DNA from: Bugula neritina
Taxonomy: Eukaryota; Animalia; Bryozoa
Direction of reading: 5' to 3'
NCBI GenBank assembly: GCA_964035545.1
Contig: OZ037772.1
Span: 12,398,818-12,462,817, forward strand
DNA length: 64,000 nt
Of the stretch, positions 51,756 through 64,000 are shown in pieces. The notes beneath the pieces are model-generated. The model was not told the origin of the DNA. It searched no databases and saw only the letters and a list, made by a program, of their open reading frames with translations. The stretch's first letter is position 1. Each line of letters begins with the position of its first letter. A program made the translations under genes and the position numbers.

Positions 51756-52784
51756 TTACACTTGGGATGACAGCCAATCATCTTTCAGCAGCCACTTGAG
51801 ATGAGGCAGCGAGTCATCGGCATCAACGACAGCGCTGTAGTCAACATCATACCTTCTCTTTATGTCGTACGTAACGTCATAGCTTAGTCTCTTGAAACCG
51901 GAGAAGAATTGATTAGCAATAGATGGATTAAGAAACCTCAGACCGACATAGTCTTGTAGAAGGCGGGGAAGGGGGAGCTTATAGCAGTCCCGCACCACAT
52001 CTACATTACTCAGTCTACTACGGATCTTCAGTCTACACAGCTGCTGCAGGCTCAGGGGGTTCTCCTTAGCCTTACATATCAGCTTGTCAAACTTCTTGTT
52101 GACGGGGCGCTGGTCGTCCGCACAGTTGACGTGCTGACACACAATTCCTATCTCAATCATGGCTAGAGCAATAGGCAGCATCTCCTCGTCATAAGAGCTG
52201 GATACAATATAGGCCAGAGTGCACGGCGGCATGCAGGCTATCAGATAGAGCAAGTTCCGCGCCCCCCGGTAGTGGTGGTAGTTCACCGCAAACCTGAACG
52301 CCGGCACCATGAAGCTGTTAGACTTTGCCTCGGGATACAATCGGATAAAATTGTACAAAATTGCCGACTTGAAGCTAGATGCTTGCTCCAGATACCGTAA
52401 CAGCTTCTCTTGCACGGGTTTACTGAATCCTACGAGTAGTACTAACTCAATGTAGTTTCGCAGCAAATCTCGTTCTTTCTCTAAAGAAAAGTCCGTTGGT
52501 TTCAAAATAGTGAGCACTACGGACAGGAAGTAACGAATGTTGCCACATCGCAACTCATTTCCCATCCTTTTCGTGTCAAAACGCTTGTAAACAACGGACA
52601 AGGCTTTCTTCAGTGTCGCAACAACTGCTTCCTCTCCCTTGTCAAAGTACCCCGAGTGAAAGAGTTCCTCTAACAGATCAGAATCCTCCTGAATCATCGG
52701 CATTGTGATACGACCTTCACCCAGGCACTGCAGAGAAAATGTCTTCTCTGAAGCTTCCCTCTCGCCCATGTTTCTACAAAACAT
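51756..52784 (-). CDS. SOCS-box-containing protein (putative Elongin BC-cullin E3 substrate adaptor), 342 aa
   Basis: PLSLQQLCRLKIRSRL...KLPLPRLLQDYV is a canonical BC-box + cullin box. The N-terminal part looks helical and is unrecognised. An acceptor at 52841-52842 and a donor at 53340 imply 5'UTR exons. Confidence 0.85.
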   Translation of the reverse strand: MFCRNMGEREASEKTFSLQCLGEGRITMPMIQEDSDLLEELFHSGYFDKGEEAVVATLKKALSVVYKRFDTKRMGNELRCGNIRYFLSVVLTILKPTDFSLEKERDLLRNYIELVLLVGFSKPVQEKLLRYLEQASSFKSAILYNFIRLYPEAKSNSFMVPAFRFAVNYHHYRGARNLLYLIACMPPCTLAYIVSSSYDEEMLPIALAMIEIGIVCQHVNCADDQRPVNKKFDKLICKAKENPLSLQQLCRLKIRSRLSNVDVVRDCYKLPLPRLLQDYVGLRFLNPSIANQFFSGFKRLSYDVTYDIKRRYDVDYSAVVDADDSLPHLKWLLKDDWLSSQV

Positions 52785-55750: not shown

Positions 55751-57640
55751 ATGGCCGCAGGCGGTTCACAACAGAGAACTTACCCTTCCTATCGCTCACT
55801 GGAGTATCTTAAAGACGCCTCCCAGATTTCAATACAGGCAGCTTGGTTGGACGGCAACAAGTATTTACTTCTTTTAGCTGAGAACTCGATAACTCATTGC
55901 TGTACAGTTCAAGGGTCACCAGACGTGGTGATTAGAGACCGAACACATGCCCACATCAGGTTCTGTATTAGTGGAGCAGCTCTAGGTCTGCCGGTTATCA
56001 AGTCCTATGTACAATCTAAATATGATAAGATTGGAAAGATAAAAAATTCTAATTTGATTACCCAAAGCAGAGTGCACGGCACCATTAAAGCAGAGATAGC
56101 TGCAACAGATGATTACAGGTATGTGTATTTTGAAGAAGAAACTCATAACAGAAAAGCAAGTATCACAGTTAATGTCAAAGCCATCACTCTCAGAATGGAC
56201 GTATGCCTGCCCACTTCTGTGAAAGCATTGCTCATATCCTATGCTGTAATGTTGGCACTGTCCAGGCACAGAAATAAAGTTGTAGATTTTATGGGACCTC
56301 TATTGAGCAGCGAAGAATGCGCAAGATTATTGCCTGTATGTGACACCTGTGATGCTTTACCTATCTCTGAGAGAGGTATTCCTACAGAAGTGGACTCTAA
56401 GTTTCCCCAGACATCCCGCCTGATTCTTAGACCATTTCTGACTAACAAAGATCACAGCAAGTATTCGTTTGTGTTGATCAACCCTGCAAATAACAATGAA
56501 GTTTGCATGACTTTGGTTTATTACAAAGAGTCCGGCAGATTAGATTGTATTGAGCCCTTTGGTTCAGTCACCCATTCAGCTAAAGGGTTTAACAATTTTG
56601 ATGATGAAATGTGGTTGTATGCTAGTGCTACCGGCCACTGCCGTGGCATAGCCGGCGTCATTCCTAAATTTCAATCTGAAGAACACGTGGTTAAACTGGA
56701 AAACATAGAGAGAGAAGACCTGCACCCTAACAGAATCCTCAAATTCATAATTCTTAGAAAGTACGATCAATATTCTACTTATCCCATCATTAATTTAGAA
56801 GATGAAGAAATTGTTAGATTTACTGCATGCCCAACTCACTTGACTTTGGAAATGCTTCCCAATTTGCTCCCCAATGAGATGATGCTTTGCATTACATTTT
56901 CTCTTAAGTACATACTGAATGCCTTGAAAAATGTGTTTGATCTTCCCTGTCTACAAGTGGATCCATTCACTTCAAACTACTTTGCATACAGTCAATGGTA
57001 CTCCAATACAAGGATGCACAGGTTTGTAAATCGGATATTTGAAAAAAGAAATTTCCTGCATGTAAGAGCATCAGCTGCTCACTTCGCTAACAAAGTATTT
57101 TACTTAGATGTCATTAATCCTGTGAGATCTCAGAATGACCTACTATACAAGGTCAAATGTCATTTGGACCCCACCTTAACTGAATTGGTATCGGCAGATG
57201 TCATCAGCCGTGATGGCGCAAATACTTTGTTCCGAGTAAACTACTTCAAGCACAAAAAATTGATTACAGTTTTTAATGAGCATGTTGGAGACATTGGTGG
57301 TATTGATCATAACTCCATGTTTGATCGTAATGGCACCGAGTTGACAAAGCTGTTTCAACTAACGCCAAAAGGTGAGTGCAGTGCCAGGTACGCTCAAGAA
57401 AAGTTCATTTCTTACATGAACTATGAGCTATTCTGCACAATTCGCTCCGTTTATCATGCTTCCACTATTTCAATCTCAAGCAAGAAGGAAGAAGCGGGAT
57501 GGGTGACCAACATCCTGTTTCTTGCCTACACCATCAAAGAGTGTTTTAGCACATACAACTTCTCACAGATTCCTGTGCCCCATGTCAGTGTTTATCCCAA
57601 TAGAGGATATTTGGATGACAGTGATTTAGAAGAGGATTAA
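55751..57640 (+). CDS. Triple scramblase/Tubby-like domain protein, paralog 1 (629 aa)
   Basis: Single long ORF. SLEYLKDASQISIQ...NKY...ITLRMDVCLPTSVKALLISYAVMLAL resembles the start and end of the phospholipid scramblase domain; similar strand-then-hydrophobic-helix endings recur twice more. The ORF is certain; the domain call is inference. Confidence 0.8.
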   Translation: MAAGGSQQRTYPSYRSLEYLKDASQISIQAAWLDGNKYLLLLAENSITHCCTVQGSPDVVIRDRTHAHIRFCISGAALGLPVIKSYVQSKYDKIGKIKNSNLITQSRVHGTIKAEIAATDDYRYVYFEEETHNRKASITVNVKAITLRMDVCLPTSVKALLISYAVMLALSRHRNKVVDFMGPLLSSEECARLLPVCDTCDALPISERGIPTEVDSKFPQTSRLILRPFLTNKDHSKYSFVLINPANNNEVCMTLVYYKESGRLDCIEPFGSVTHSAKGFNNFDDEMWLYASATGHCRGIAGVIPKFQSEEHVVKLENIEREDLHPNRILKFIILRKYDQYSTYPIINLEDEEIVRFTACPTHLTLEMLPNLLPNEMMLCITFSLKYILNALKNVFDLPCLQVDPFTSNYFAYSQWYSNTRMHRFVNRIFEKRNFLHVRASAAHFANKVFYLDVINPVRSQNDLLYKVKCHLDPTLTELVSADVISRDGANTLFRVNYFKHKKLITVFNEHVGDIGGIDHNSMFDRNGTELTKLFQLTPKGECSARYAQEKFISYMNYELFCTIRSVYHASTISISSKKEEAGWVTNILFLAYTIKECFSTYNFSQIPVPHVSVYPNRGYLDDSDLEED

Positions 57641-58361
57641 AAGGCCGGAGACCAACATTTCTAAATCAGAAACCAAATGCATAACCACTATTGGCACCCA
57701 ATTGCTGAGTGTAGCAGTTATGAGATTCACAACTTTTTAGGTTCAAGTGTTTTGATGAAACTTATTTCATGCATTTTTAAAAAAAAAGTTTCAAATAAAA
57801 TTATGTAAAATTTTGTTTGTCAATATTATGTGTATTGCAACAATAAACAAATATTTTAAGCAAAAAATGTACAGCATGGGTAATAAATTAAAATTTTTAT
57901 TTTAGTTTATTTGCAAATCAATTCCTTTTAAGATCCAGTGTTGCTATAGCCATTCTCTAAGTGCTTTTAAGTAAATTGAGGAAATTGTGAAGTACTAAGT
58001 TTTATGCGGTTGCCTAAAATATTATTTATATTAAATAAAAAGGTTGTTGTTCATGTAAGTTCTTGAAGAGCATATTTCTCTTGAACAGCAAGAGAGATTT
58101 TTATTTTTTTCTGTTTCTTGTCTTGTAATTGTAAATTAGACCAACTGTTAAAATCATCATCATGCAATAAACGTAAGTCATTAAATTCAATTAAAAGAAT
58201 ACATTAGGCTATTAATCATGGTAATTTTTATTGGTTGTCTAGCATACTTGGAAATACCTAAAATTGCTCAAATAAGCAAACAATTAAAAATAAGTAAATT
58301 GACCTTTTCAAAGCATATAATAATTTTTCTTTTTAAAAATTATAAATATACAACTAACAAG

Positions 58362-60239
58362 ATGGCCGCAGGCGGCTCACGACAAGAAACTTCCCCTTCC
58401 CGTCAGTCATTGGAGTATCTTAAAGATGCTTCCCAAATTTCGATACAGGCAGCCTTGTTTGGGAACAACAAGTATTTACTTCTTATAGCAGAGAATTCTG
58501 TCACTCACTGCTGTACAATAAGCGGGTCGCCAGACGTAGTGATTAGAGACCGAAGACATACTCAGATCAGGTTCTGTATTAGTGGAGCGGCTCTAGGTCT
58601 GCCTGTTATCAAGTCTTACGTACAATCTAAGCGTGATAAGATTGGAAAAATTAAAGGTTCTCACATGATTATCCAGAGCAGACTTCACGGTGCCTTTGTA
58701 GAAGAAAGCTCTGCAGCAGATTGCAACAATAAATACGTGTATCTTGGAGAGGAAGACCAAAACAGGCTTGCAAGTATCTTGGTTAGTGACAGATTGATTA
58801 CTGTCAAAATGAACATATGCCTGCCCACTTCTGTAAAAGCCTTAGTCATATCCTTTGCTGTGATGTTGGCCCTGTCAAAGCACAGAAACAGAGTTGTAGA
58901 TTTCATGGGACCTCCATTGAACAGTGAAGAATGTGCCAGATTATTACCCGCATGTGACACCTGTAAACCTCTCTCTTGTTCTGAGCAAGGTAGTCCTACA
59001 AAAATAGACTTCAATCTACCTGTTTCTTCTCGGCTAATTATCAAACCGTTTACGACAAACGCAACACATAGAAAATACACGTTTGTGTTAATGAACTCAG
59101 CACGTAACAATGAGGTCTGCATGACTTTAGTATATTATAAAAGAAGTGGAAGGCTGGATTGCATCGAGCCTTTTGGTTCGGTGATTCATAGTGCTAAAAA
59201 ATCAGGATGTTCAAAAAATGACCTGAAGCTGTTTACTAGTCCTTCAGGACGCTGCTGGGGGTTCTCAAACTCTGCTTCTGCAGGTACAACCACATGTACT
59301 TCAGTTGAGTTGGTAAACTTGGAAAGAGAAGAGGATCACCCAAATAGACTTTTGAAGTTTCTCATTCAACAGGAAGATAGATTTTATCTCTCTTATCCAA
59401 TTATTAATACAAATGGTGAAGAGATAATTAAGTTTACCACAGTGCCAGGTTATGCGACGTTAGACATGCATCCCTGCTTGCACGACTCAGAGAAACTGCT
59501 TGCCATCATGTTTTCACTCAAGTACTATCTTAAAACAATTGAAGGAAAATTAGAGCTTCCATGTCTACAGTGTAATCGATTTAGTAATAACTACTTTGCA
59601 TATAAACAATGGCAGCCTAGCTCAAGAGTGCATAGACGCATTAATGACATGTTTGCAAGAAGAAATAATTTGCATTTGAGAGGATCTGCATTTGACCCTC
59701 TTAACCGAACCTACTTTGTAGATTGTCTTAGTACTGTACCAACTGATAATGACCTAATATACAAAGTGAAGTGTCAGTTGAACGAAGCCGCCACCGAGTT
59801 GGTCTCGGCGGAGGTCAGGAATCGTACCGAAGCTTATACGTTGTTTTACGTGAAATATTATTCTGAGAAGAATCTCATTACTGTGCAAAACGACTGCATT
59901 GGGCACATTGGTTATATTGATAACAATGTTGTCTATGATCGAGCTGGGATTCACTTGGCAGATATGCGGAGAGAGCCAGCAAGAAGAGATGTTCCGGACA
60001 ATTTTGTATCATACTTGAATGACGAGCCGTTTTGCACTATCCATTCTATTTTGCATTCAACTACTGTGGCAATTTCAAGTAAAAGGGACACATTAGGATG
60101 GATTATGAAAGTTCTCTACTTAGCGTTTACTATCAAAGAATGCTTCAGTACTTATAAGTTCTCCCAGGTTCCTTTACCAATGGTTAGTAGTCACCCTAAC
60201 CGAGCATATTTGGATGACAGTGATATTGATGAAGACTAG
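58362..60239 (+). CDS. Triple scramblase/Tubby-like domain protein, paralog 2 (625 aa)
   Basis: Colinear homolog of paralog 1; start placed at MAAGGS (58362) by homology rather than at 58218. Confidence 0.8.
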   Translation: MAAGGSRQETSPSRQSLEYLKDASQISIQAALFGNNKYLLLIAENSVTHCCTISGSPDVVIRDRRHTQIRFCISGAALGLPVIKSYVQSKRDKIGKIKGSHMIIQSRLHGAFVEESSAADCNNKYVYLGEEDQNRLASILVSDRLITVKMNICLPTSVKALVISFAVMLALSKHRNRVVDFMGPPLNSEECARLLPACDTCKPLSCSEQGSPTKIDFNLPVSSRLIIKPFTTNATHRKYTFVLMNSARNNEVCMTLVYYKRSGRLDCIEPFGSVIHSAKKSGCSKNDLKLFTSPSGRCWGFSNSASAGTTTCTSVELVNLEREEDHPNRLLKFLIQQEDRFYLSYPIINTNGEEIIKFTTVPGYATLDMHPCLHDSEKLLAIMFSLKYYLKTIEGKLELPCLQCNRFSNNYFAYKQWQPSSRVHRRINDMFARRNNLHLRGSAFDPLNRTYFVDCLSTVPTDNDLIYKVKCQLNEAATELVSAEVRNRTEAYTLFYVKYYSEKNLITVQNDCIGHIGYIDNNVVYDRAGIHLADMRREPARRDVPDNFVSYLNDEPFCTIHSILHSTTVAISSKRDTLGWIMKVLYLAFTIKECFSTYKFSQVPLPMVSSHPNRAYLDDSDIDED

Positions 60240-60847
60240 ATATATCTCACAAATACAACCTAATGCAATGATTGATCAACCCAAGTTTTTAAATACCTAA
60301 TTGTATCAAAAACCTAGCTTCTTTTCACATTGCAGTTTTGATATTTGGTTTGTTTTGTCAGGCACTGCACTGATTAACATTCTAACTATTTGCAATCAAA
60401 GTATTCTTTCGGTCATATAAAATAAAAGTAATAAAAGTAAAAAAAAGTAGAAAAAAAATAATTGTTAGTTGATGATATATATCCTCAGCAAATCTCGGCG
60501 GTAAAGCACTTAGCTGCTTATCTTAAAGATTCTTTTATTAGGCAAAAGTAATATGTAATAATATATTATATGTATGTTCAAAGCTAGTATAAATTTCAAA
60601 ATATTTTGCAAGTTGCACAAATATGATATCTAATGCAGATGCATTGTTTTAGATTCGTTATACTGAATTAATACTTTCAATTTAATCAATGGTTGAAAAT
60701 GGATTCTCGCAGAAATTGTTTGCATGCCAGGTGCATATTTTAAAAGAATTTGCTTATCTAAAAGTTAGCACACATTTAGTTTGGATGAAAGTATAATTCC
60801 AACTACTATACTACAGCTGGTCTGGAACTGGCGCATCTATTATCAAC

Positions 60848-62713
60848 ATGGCGGCAGCAGCTTCTACACAACAGGCTGCAGAACAGCCTCATCCATCTCT
60901 GAATTATCTCAGAAATGCGGACTCTATCTTAATGGGACCAACTTTCTTCAATAAGAAAAGAGTTTTAGTAATTGCATCGAAAGAGGGGGTAACTTACTGT
61001 GGTACATATGAGGATTACTTCACTGCTGACCTGGTAATTAGAGACAAAGATAATCATATCAGGTTCTGTATTGGTGGAGCTGCACTCTCTTTACCCACCA
61101 TTAGAGCCTACATTCAGCATAAAACAAGCAAAATTGGGAAAATAGTGAATGACAAGATGATTATTCATGGAGCAAGCGGCGAGAGTGGCGGTACCTTTAT
61201 ACAAGATCCTACAGTGCAAAATCAACATAAGTATAGGTACGTGGAAGAAAAAAGTAAGCAAGAAAAAGCTGGACTTTTAGTAAGCAATGGCTCATTGACA
61301 ATACGGATGGCTGTTAGCTTATCAACATCTGCTAAAGCACTCATTATAACTTATGGTGTAAATTTAGCTCTGGCTAGACACAGGGGCATGGTTTTCAACT
61401 CTTCAGTGTCGGAGTATAACATCGCACAACATTTGGGTAGTATAACCAACCAGTGCTATCCACTTCCAGATTCTAAATGTGGTAGTCCGAGGTTAGCAAC
61501 TTCCTGTATACCAAAAACCGAACATATAATAGTAAGGCTATTTCATAAAAACAAAGCACACACCAAATATTCGTTTGCCGTAATAGATGCTGACAACGGG
61601 AATGAAGTGTTTATGACTGCAGTTTACCGTCCAGATATTAAAAGATTGGAGTATGTGGAAGCATTTGGCTCTGTAGTATATTATGCATATAGTTTCGGTC
61701 ACATGTCTCATAATCTAAGGCTGCTGGCAAGTCCCATGGGAGAATGCTGTGGTGCAGTAGAGAGAGTGGAGGAAAGACATCGCTCACAAACTTTTGTTTT
61801 AGCAATTCATGAGCTGCCCAGTAACCATCCGAATTGTAGACTCAAATGCGTTTTGTCACGAGATATTAGATATTCTCAAAGTATAGACATTCTTGATTCA
61901 AATAATGAAAGTAATGTCACTATCAAGATTAGAGAGACACACATAGACTTATATATGTATTCCTTTCTATTACCTTCCGTGAAACTGTTAGCAGTTTCAT
62001 TCGCTATGAAAGTGTTACTGCAACATTTAAAATCACATGAAAAGCTGTTTTGTTCAGACTTAGAGCCCTTCAAGAAAAACTACTTTGCATATCGTCAACC
62101 TGAGAGTATGGAAACGTTTGCAGAGAATTACAACGAGATAATGAGTGACAAAAATAAACTGTGCTTTCGAGGTTCAGCTAGAGATTTTGACAAGAAGGTT
62201 TTGTTTTTAGATGCATTATACCCTAGCATGGAGGCAAGTTACATAATACTCAAACTGAAGTGTACTCTCCACCCCAACGCCATGGATCTAAAGTCTGCAG
62301 AGGTCTTGACTCCATCAGGACAGCCTATTGTTCTCATCAAATACTCAGCTGATGGCAAACTCTCCACAGTGATGAATCACTTTGCTGGTATTATCGGTAC
62401 AGTTGACAGGCAGCAGATTAAAGACGCTACAGGCACGCATCTGGCTGATATTGAGCAGAAAGGGCAAGGTAGACTCACCGTGTTTGAAGGTTCAGATTCG
62501 GCTGGCAGGATGTTTACTGTTAATATAGGCAACTGTATCGACAGTGTAGAGCTTTTTGTTGATGAAAACGCAGGGTGGAGAATGAATGTGCTTGCTCTTG
62601 CCTTTGCACTTAAAGCTGGCTTTATGGAATACAAACTCTACCAATATCCTTTACCTCGTATGGAGGCTATTTCATCTCTGGCAGATGTGGATGGAAGTGA
62701 AGAGAATGATTAA
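60848..62713 (+). CDS. Triple scramblase/Tubby-like domain protein, paralog 3 (621 aa)
   Basis: More diverged colinear homolog (VIRD..IRFCIGGAAL, NEVFMT, EAFGSV, NYFAY, FRGSA, GW motifs). Confidence 0.8.
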   Translation: MAAAASTQQAAEQPHPSLNYLRNADSILMGPTFFNKKRVLVIASKEGVTYCGTYEDYFTADLVIRDKDNHIRFCIGGAALSLPTIRAYIQHKTSKIGKIVNDKMIIHGASGESGGTFIQDPTVQNQHKYRYVEEKSKQEKAGLLVSNGSLTIRMAVSLSTSAKALIITYGVNLALARHRGMVFNSSVSEYNIAQHLGSITNQCYPLPDSKCGSPRLATSCIPKTEHIIVRLFHKNKAHTKYSFAVIDADNGNEVFMTAVYRPDIKRLEYVEAFGSVVYYAYSFGHMSHNLRLLASPMGECCGAVERVEERHRSQTFVLAIHELPSNHPNCRLKCVLSRDIRYSQSIDILDSNNESNVTIKIRETHIDLYMYSFLLPSVKLLAVSFAMKVLLQHLKSHEKLFCSDLEPFKKNYFAYRQPESMETFAENYNEIMSDKNKLCFRGSARDFDKKVLFLDALYPSMEASYIILKLKCTLHPNAMDLKSAEVLTPSGQPIVLIKYSADGKLSTVMNHFAGIIGTVDRQQIKDATGTHLADIEQKGQGRLTVFEGSDSAGRMFTVNIGNCIDSVELFVDENAGWRMNVLALAFALKAGFMEYKLYQYPLPRMEAISSLADVDGSEEND

Positions 62714-63719
62714 TGGCTGATATTATTGAAACAAATTTATGTAGTAACATATTAGTGTTGGTAGTAGAAGAAGATAAGATAACAAAAACTTGTCAATTCA
62801 CTTATTTGCATAGTTGCAGTGGTAGTTTATTTAACTTAGAAAAAATACACAAACTTTTGTACTGAAGATTTGTTGACAAATCCTCCAATCATTGAGTTCT
62901 CAAGTATATTGATGAGTCAAGTATTACATTATACTTATGTATAACAACTTAATGCTCTAAAAACATGTATGTATGTATGTATGTGTATAATAAAGAATAT
63001 TATAATAATGACCAAAATTTTGTTGTATATGTATCACAATATTAATATAATAATGACCAGAATATACTCCTTTTTATGTATAATAAGTAACAGAATGATG
63101 ACTAAAAAATATTGTAGGCCTATAATATGTGTAATAATATAATTGCCAAAATATTATTATTGAACTGTATAATGTTTTATAATATAATAATATAATGATC
63201 AAAGTAGCACTGTATTTTAATAACAGTAACAAAATGCTGCTGCATATGTGTAAAATATAATTAATACAAATATAAGAACAAAGAAATGTGTAATTAATAT
63301 TATAATGGTTGGATGTTGTTACATTCAAAATATGCAGAAGTTATTTGCTTATAAAAGTCTAAATGGCAGATGCAATTTTATTCATTTAAGATTTTTTACT
63401 TATTATATTTCAAATGTGACTGAACTAAGCAAATTGAATTAAAAAAATACATTTTCTGCTTCTAAAGGAAAGGTGTAAAAATTAAACTGAAAGTTAGAGA
63501 AAAACAACGAGCATGCTAAATCTAGTGTTCTTTTGAGTAAAAACATTCTTTTGAAAAAATATTAAAGATATTTATTGAAATATTCCTGTTATTTGAAACG
63601 CATAGCAAACTGCACATTCTTGTGCAAAAAGCAAAAAAAAAACAAAGTATTTAGTTGCTTAAAGTTTTCAAGTTACAGCTGCTAGTCTGGTACTAGAGTG
63701 TAACAAGATTGTAATACAA

Positions 63720-64000
63720 ATGGCTACAGCAGGTTCTGGGCAACTCTGTGCCGACAGAGAGTCATCTTATCCGTCACTGGAATATCTCAGGAATTCCAGC
63801 TCTATCTCAATAGGTCCATCATTCTTTAGGGGTAATAAATTCTTGCTACTTGTGTCGAATGACTCAGTTACTCACTGCTGTCCTCATGACAAGCACTCAA
63901 GCGCTGACCTCGTTATCAGAGACAGAGATCACGCCAACGTCAGGTTCTGTATTGGTGGAGCTGCTTTGGCCTTACCCACCATTAGAGCCTACATTCAGCA
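63720..64000 (+). CDS. Paralog 4, truncated by the window end
   Basis: MATAGSGQLCADRESSYPSLEYLRNSSSISIGPSFFRGNKFLLLVSNDSVTHCCPHDKHSSADLVIRDRDHANVRFCIGGAALALPTIRAYIQ; missing from the ORF track. Confidence 0.88.
   Translation, partial: MATAGSGQLCADRESSYPSLEYLRNSSSISIGPSFFRGNKFLLLVSNDSVTHCCPHDKHSSADLVIRDRDHANVRFCIGGAALALPTIRAYIQ

What the first reader, a model, noticed from the sequence alone, without database searches (positions are those of the whole stretch)
55751..64000. Tandem array of four or more intronless-CDS genes encoding an apparent triple scramblase/Tubby-fold protein
Seen: at least four head-to-tail paralogs of ~620 aa with uninterrupted CDS in an otherwise intron-dense region, no signal peptide, and an acidic tail (YLDDSDLEED / YLDDSDIDED / DGSEEND). 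Each shows three segments of ~170 aa made of short beta-like stretches that end in a hydrophobic helix (LPTSVKALLISYAVML; LLPSVKLLAVSFAMKV; GWRMNVLALAFALKA). Established: the PLSCR scramblase / Tubby C-terminal / LURP-one fold is a beta-barrel around a C-terminal hydrophobic helix; PLSCR1 begins GLEYL..IDQILI and ends LDVKMKAVMIGACFL, normally occurs as one domain, and has antiviral roles. Inference: a lineage-specific, expanded, three-barrel membrane/lipid-binding family, possibly defence-related.
Basis: partly seen in the sequence, partly recalled or inferred. Interest (0 to 1): 0.8.

Follow-up and report, generated by a model that had tools for sequence, protein, structure and literature searches.

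The report
Triple Tubby/scramblase-barrel gene array in Bugula
A moss animal (Bugula neritina) carries a tandem row of five intron-free, selectively constrained genes whose proteins are three copies in a row of the Tubby/scramblase/LURP-one beta-barrel, an architecture not described before for this normally single-domain fold; what the proteins do is still unknown.

The parts
55751..57640 (+). Array copy 1: intronless CDS, 629 aa, three Tubby-like barrels, acidic tail
   Evidence: ORF. It is 96% identical to its orthologue in the sister-lineage assembly, with dN/dS 0.09. An RNA-type contig of 1,974 nt covers the ORF and stops about 60 nt after the stop codon.
58362..60239 (+). Array copy 2: intronless CDS, 625 aa from the conserved Met. 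The ORF is open from an upstream ATG at 58218, which is probably not used.
   Evidence: The orthologue P0003 starts at the conserved Met. RNA-type contigs begin at about 58344-58361. dN/dS is 0.12.
60848..62713 (+). Array copy 3: intronless CDS, 621 aa; this is the protein modelled
   Evidence: dN/dS against its orthologue is 0.18.
60848..61405 (+). Copy 3, barrel 1 (aa 1-186): 12 strands plus helix 160-177
61406..62047 (+). Copy 3, linker plus barrel 2 (aa 187-400): 12 strands plus helix 376-396
62048..62713 (+). Copy 3, linker plus barrel 3 (aa 401-621): N-terminal helix, 12 strands, helix 576-595, conserved P-x-P motif, acidic tail
   Evidence: Secondary structure with pLDDT 75-86 in the full model. 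Profile homology to barrel 2 is 98% (E 5e-12 to 8e-15) and to barrel 1 is 94-96%. It was not folded alone. Language-model neighbours are LOR and Tubby_C_like (a lead only).
63720..64000 (+). Array copy 4, first 93 codons; the gene runs off the window (full 636 aa = L002:1501-3411). Copy 5 lies beyond it (L003:1468-3378).

Best explanation
These are real, expressed-looking, selectively constrained genes of Bugula neritina. They encode cytosolic proteins built from three tandem, mutually homologous Tubby-like domains. Each domain is a closed 12-stranded beta-barrel wrapped around its own C-terminal hydrophobic helix, the fold of Tubby, phospholipid scramblases and LURP-one/DUF567. SHOWN: the gene array, its conservation and purifying selection, the internal triplication, and the fold of barrels 1 and 2. 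INFERRED: barrel 3 has the same fold. The proteins have no signal peptide, no true transmembrane segment and no detectable enzymatic domain. They therefore most likely act as non-catalytic binding or scaffold proteins that attach peripherally to membranes or other ligands through the barrel surfaces, as Tubby does with PI(4,5)P2 and PLSCRs do at membranes. Three barrels would give multivalent or combinatorial binding. The CK2-like acidic tail of the five tandem copies may act as a regulatory or sorting signal. The family arose by module duplication, since 2-, 3- and at-least-4-barrel forms exist, followed by local tandem gene duplication.
Against: No sequence-level link to any Tubby-clan Pfam family or to PDB sequences. 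The exon-wise profile comparison with this genome's own scramblases is not significant. Barrel 3 was not folded on its own. The full-length model is only moderate (pLDDT 61, pTM 0.51), so the inter-barrel arrangement is unknown. Charge per barrel is not conserved across the family, so there is no conserved basic patch to point to for lipid binding. The scramblase Ca2+ motif and poly-Cys palmitoylation motif are absent. No functional, localisation or condition-specific expression data exist. The RNA nature of the runs is a guess by the tool.
Confidence: 0.6

Rival explanations
1. The family is an innate-immunity or anti-pathogen effector set. The tandem expansion would reflect an arms race, by analogy with antiviral PLSCR1 and plant LURP1.
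For: There are lineage-restricted tandem arrays of intronless genes (5 + 4 copies). The younger copies have somewhat higher dN/dS (0.24-0.28). PLSCR1 and LURP1 have published defence roles (titles and abstracts listed).
Against: All pairwise dN/dS values are well below 1. One-to-one orthologues are retained between lineages, so there is no rapid turnover. No immune-type domain was found. There are no infection or stress expression data.
Confidence: 0.12
2. They are membrane-tethered or shuttling transcription regulators, as proposed for Tubby and PLSCR1, with the barrels binding DNA.
For: They share the fold of the superfamily for which this role was proposed (PMC2639001). Barrel 1 of copies 1-3 is basic (net +8).
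Against: The basic character is not conserved in copies 4-6 or in the remote relatives. No NLS or activation domain was identified. Nothing here tests DNA binding.
Confidence: 0.08
3. The Tubby-like assignment is a modelling artefact, and the modules are some other beta-rich fold (LolA-like, lipocalin-like or porin-like).
For: The full-length model is of moderate confidence. Full-length Foldseek gave only noise. 12-stranded porins and LolA-like proteins appear lower in the hit lists.
Against: The D1 model has pLDDT 89.9. The two solved Tubby-like representatives top two independent searches on two different modules, with 147-159 residues aligned including the terminal helix and a gap of 4-6 Z units to the porin and LolA-like hits. 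Atlas neighbours are scramblase and LOR. Language-model neighbours fall in the same clan.
Confidence: 0.05
4. The ORFs are non-functional: decaying retrocopies, transposon-derived ORFs or annotation artefacts.
For: They are intronless and tandemly repeated. The fourth copy is split over two frames in the 2020 draft.
Against: All ten own-genome copies have open frames. dN/dS is 0.09-0.28. The family is conserved in diverged relatives. No transposon domains were found. ORF-restricted RNA-type contigs are present.
Confidence: 0.02

Closest known systems
LURP-one-related / DUF567 proteins (Pfam LOR, PF04525; At5g01750, PDB 1zxu/2q4m)
   Different: The LOR HMM finds nothing in any member or in the genome. 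Sequence identity is 7-12%. LOR proteins are single-domain, whereas here three barrels sit on one chain. LOR is reported from plants, fungi, bacteria and archaea (PMC2639001), not as a multi-barrel animal protein.
Tubby C-terminal domain (Pfam Tub, PF01167; mouse Tubby 1i7e, human TULP1 3c5n)
   Different: There is no Tub HMM hit. Tubby domains are larger (about 240-260 aa), occur once per protein and sit at the C-terminus after a divergent N-terminal region. The PI(4,5)P2-binding residues were not mappable here.
Phospholipid scramblases (Pfam Scramblase, PF03803; PLSCR1-5)
   Same: These are the nearest predicted structures in the ESM Atlas (TM 0.73-0.75 over 165-168 residues). The terminal helix shows the same 'pseudo-transmembrane' hydrophobicity. 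There is a loosely similar K-A-hydrophobic helix start.
   Different: The Scramblase HMM detects this genome's canonical, intron-containing scramblases on other contigs but not the array, even at E<=1. The Asp-rich loop before the helix, present in the genome's own scramblases, is absent from the modules. There is no poly-Cys palmitoylation cluster and no Pro-rich N-terminus. There are three barrels rather than one.

Membership tests
Tubby-like fold superfamily (Tub / Scramblase / LOR clan) | Closed beta-barrel of 12 strands | tested here: met
   DSSP on the models gives 12 strands in each of the three modules and 12 strands in barrel 1 folded alone at pLDDT 89.9. This is predicted, not solved.
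Tubby-like fold superfamily (Tub / Scramblase / LOR clan) | Hydrophobic C-terminal helix running through the barrel (PMC2639001) | tested here: met
   Each module ends in an 18-21 residue hydrophobic helix. The structural alignments to 2q4m and 1i7e extend through it (model ranges 17-178 and 216-395). Coordinates could not be inspected directly, so burial of the helix is inferred from the alignment.
Tubby-like fold superfamily (Tub / Scramblase / LOR clan) | Structural similarity to solved members clearly above background | tested here: met
Phospholipid scramblase (PF03803) | Match to the family HMM at or above the gathering score | tested here: not met
   No hit at E<=10 in copies 1-3, in 10 relatives or in 18 barrel-1 sequences. 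The genome-wide scan finds only canonical scramblase loci elsewhere.
Phospholipid scramblase (PF03803) | Asp-rich Ca2+-binding loop immediately before the terminal helix | tested here: not met
   It is present in this genome's own scramblase exons. The equivalent stretch of the modules has no such motif (alignment; hhalign not significant).
Phospholipid scramblase (PF03803) | Poly-cysteine palmitoylation cluster | tested here: inconclusive
   Only CC pairs and CxxC or CxCxxC motifs are present, mostly in linkers and not conserved across the family. Positional equivalence could not be established.
LURP-one-related (PF04525) | Match to the family HMM at or above the gathering score | tested here: not met
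   no hit.
Tubby (PF01167) | Match to the family HMM; phosphoinositide-binding basic residues in the barrel groove | tested here: not met
   HMM: no hit. The lipid-binding residues could not be tested, because no residue-level structural alignment or coordinates were available.

The most novel reading that the evidence does not exclude
The multi-barrel proteins are a previously unrecognised class of multivalent membrane or lipid sensors (or lipid-handling proteins) of bryozoans and other, still unidentified, marine eukaryotes. Each barrel would read a different lipid or ligand. The internal position of two of the three 'pseudo-transmembrane' helices would give natural evidence that this helix is a buried core element rather than a membrane anchor throughout the scramblase/Tubby superfamily.
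Probability: 0.2. Interest if true: 0.7.

Novelty: new variant of a known kind. Interest (0 to 1): 0.55.

Why it matters
The Tubby/scramblase/LURP-one barrel is known as a one-per-protein domain whose mechanism is still debated: is the terminal helix a membrane anchor or a buried core, and do these proteins scramble lipids, sense phosphoinositides or regulate transcription? This family strings two, three or more of these barrels on one soluble chain and is invisible to all current family models. That extends the superfamily's architecture space. It also gives a natural argument for the buried-helix view, because two of the three helices are internal to the chain. Finally, it provides names for about 10 'hypothetical' Bugula genes and their environmental relatives. 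It does not yet reveal a new biological process, because function is untested.

Tried and rejected
1. BLASTP self-comparison of each copy gave no internal repeat. hhalign with only six close paralogues gave just a weak 40-residue match. The triplication became clear only with 15 diverse members.
2. Pfam on full proteins, on relatives and on 18 isolated barrel-1 sequences gave only chance hits.
3. A profile search of PDB sequences gave 0 hits at E<=10.
4. Foldseek with the full three-domain model gave only noise at TM about 0.1, mostly propellers and teneurins; this was rejected.
5. hhalign of the module profiles against this genome's canonical scramblase exons was not significant (best P 0.012).
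6. Two word searches for named relatives returned only Bugula neritina and unnamed ENA or JGI entries. Cluster look-ups gave no names, so the taxa of the remote relatives remain unknown.
7. P0024 (2,674 aa, a bacterial Ig/SusE-repeat protein) was rejected as a spurious low-complexity beta-repeat hit.
8. Charge per barrel as a hint to lipid or DNA binding is not conserved.
9. Literature searches for the accession numbers and for tandem Tubby-domain architectures found nothing relevant.

Full report
OBSERVATION. The + strand of 55751-64000 holds three complete uninterrupted ORFs: 55751-57640 (629 aa), 58218-60239 (673 aa from the first ATG, 625 aa from the conserved Met at 58362) and 60848-62713 (621 aa). 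A fourth begins at 63720 and leaves the window. A six-frame search of the window's own 216-Mb assembly shows that the array has five head-to-tail copies. It also finds a sixth, much more diverged copy (17-18% identity) on the opposite strand 40 kb further on. Copies 1 and 2 are 58% identical, copy 3 is about 50% identical to copies 4 and 5, and copies 4 and 5 are 89% identical to each other.

ORGANISM AND REALITY OF THE GENES. The only named homologues are 'hypothetical proteins' of Bugula neritina. The assembly size (216,009,554 bp) equals that of the Darwin Tree of Life B. neritina genome (216.00 Mb, PMC11480708). The older draft (GCA_010799875.2, PMC7576161) carries the syntenic locus in the order Prefoldin, SOCS-box gene on the minus strand, 629, 625, 622, then a mis-fused 652-aa gene model, then tubulin. 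Orthologue pairs between the two assemblies differ at dS of about 0.18-0.24 with dN/dS 0.09-0.28, and paralogue pairs give 0.24-0.34. So the genes are under purifying selection and are not decaying retrocopies.

Three libraries labelled RNA-Seq or metatranscriptomic, from two studies and a roughly 5% diverged lineage, contribute contigs that tile the ORFs. One contig of 1,974 nt runs from about 23 nt before the first ATG to about 60 nt past its stop. The spacers at 57751-58350 and about 60420-60750 are left uncovered, and there are no splice joints inside the CDS. That is what mRNA would give. However, the tool marks the RNA nature of these runs as a guess, so I call transcription probable, not shown.

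INTERNAL TRIPLICATION. BLASTP self-comparison sees nothing, and with six close paralogues only the last strand plus helix of segments 1 and 2 align (P 5e-4). An exhaustive profile search of 1.84 billion representatives found 29 hits. After I aligned 15 full-length members, the three segments proved mutually homologous over almost their whole length and in register, each alignment ending on the helix. D2-D3 scores 97.6-98.6% (E 5e-12 to 8e-15), D1-D3 94-95% and D1-D2 91-92%. The tool's own hhalign on deeper, partly independent alignments gives D1-D3 at 95.9% and E 6e-9. HMMs of the three domains also cross-hit every module of independent relatives.

Its assignment rests on three things: the 96-98% profile homology to barrels 1 and 2, its 12-strand-plus-helix pattern at pLDDT 75-86 in the full model, and language-model neighbours that are all LOR or Tubby_C_like (a lead only).

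NOT A MEMBER OF ANY DESCRIBED SEQUENCE FAMILY. Pfam finds nothing credible in the three copies, in ten relatives or in 18 isolated barrel-1 sequences. A PDB sequence-profile search gives no hit at E<=10. The Scramblase HMM run over the whole genome finds canonical, multi-exon scramblase genes on four other contigs but not the array, even at E<=1, and the LOR HMM finds nothing. I also compared the module profiles with the genome's own scramblase exons. The comparison was not significant, with a best P of 0.012 and the helices falling on each other. The Asp-rich loop that precedes the helix in those scramblases is absent from the modules. No poly-Cys cluster or Pro-rich N-terminus is present.

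FAMILY. In this genome there are five tandem three-barrel genes, one distant three-barrel gene, and a second cluster of four intronless two-barrel genes (about 410 aa, corresponding to barrels 2 and 3) at C8:11.929-11.942 Mb. Elsewhere the family has two-barrel (376-421 aa) and three-barrel (584-628 aa) members. It also has members with at least four barrels (1,089-1,389 aa, with 275-450 unassigned C-terminal residues). All come from unnamed ENA, JGI or Logan assemblies on short, AT-rich-flanked contigs, and one sits beside a Frizzled fragment, which indicates animal DNA. No named proteome other than B. neritina contains it at these sensitivities. I could not determine the taxa of the remote relatives.

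MECHANISM. Shown: the architecture and the selective constraint. Inferred: the proteins lack a signal peptide by inspection and any detectable catalytic domain. Their only hydrophobic segments are the three module helices (KD-19 of 1.7-2.0). Two of those helices are internal to the chain, so they cannot be simple C-terminal anchors. I therefore take the proteins to be soluble, non-enzymatic binding or scaffold proteins that engage membranes or other ligands through their barrel surfaces, as Tubby does with PI(4,5)P2, with the three barrels giving multivalency. My confidence in the fold is about 0.9 and in this functional reading about 0.3. Barrel charge is not conserved across the family, which argues against one simple conserved basic lipid- or DNA-binding patch. 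The defence idea has no support beyond the tandem expansion, and orthologues are retained one-to-one and constrained.

COMPARISON AND NOVELTY. The proteins work like, or at least are built like, Tubby, PLSCR and LOR domains, but they fail the sequence-defined membership tests of all three families. I found no paper mentioning these proteins or a tandem multi-barrel Tubby-like architecture in the searchable library. To my own knowledge the domain is described as single-copy per protein. I therefore class it as a new variant of a known kind: a new sequence family and a new multi-domain architecture within a known fold superfamily.

VERDICT. The structural interpretation is supported, and the functional interpretation is untested. 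Interest is moderate at 0.55. Earlier notes of this scan had flagged the fourth copy in the same way (s1-447296) and had named the organism (s1-447051). I verified both independently here.

Noticed in passing
window 51756-52784 (-): A single-ORF 342-aa gene with a C-terminal SOCS box (Pfam E 3.7e-10) lies divergently next to the array. It is in the same position in the 2020 draft assembly (L010:3342-4355). From general knowledge, vertebrate TULP4 combines a SOCS box with a Tubby domain, so the adjacency may or may not be a coincidence.
   Followed up: partly
G000:C8:11928796-11941698 (about 0.47-0.53 Mb upstream of the window): A second cluster of four intronless two-barrel genes (open frames 410-442 aa; three on the + strand, one on the - strand). 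They are orthologous to B. neritina EB796_019623 and EB796_019625 and correspond to barrels 2 and 3 of the array proteins.
   Followed up: partly
L006:292-2094 (-) = G000:C8:12500407-12502206: A sixth three-barrel gene lies 40 kb beyond the array. It is only 17-18% identical to the others, lacks the acidic tail and has a higher GC content (0.49 in its sister-lineage orthologue L011, against 0.40-0.41 in array copies 1-3). It is strongly constrained (dN/dS 0.09).
   Followed up: partly
L010:15426-19906 (GCA_010799875.2): In the 2020 draft the fourth array copy is split over two reading frames, from either a frameshift or an assembly error. The deposited gene model EB796_003290 (P0002, 652 aa) fuses pieces of copies 4 and 5.
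   Followed up: partly
window 58218-58361: The ORF of copy 2 is open 48 codons upstream of the conserved Met. RNA-type contigs start at about 58344-58361 and the orthologue starts at the conserved Met, so the upstream ATG is probably not used.
   Followed up: partly
P0012:381-389, P0015:374-379, P0016:363-368, P0022:372-377: One subgroup of remote relatives carries a CxCxxC(xxC) motif in the linker between barrels 2 and 3. It could be a small zinc knuckle or an acylation site. Archaeal LOR clusters in the Atlas are fused to zinc ribbons.
   Followed up: no
P0009 (aa 816-1091) and P0023 (aa 931-1389): Relatives with at least four barrels have long C-terminal regions with no match to the barrel HMMs or to Pfam.
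   Followed up: no
window 56520 / 61649: One 298-nt contig of the source DNA run joins copy 1 to copy 3, skipping 5,128 nt with 22 foreign letters between. It is most likely a paralogue-induced assembly chimera.
   Followed up: no
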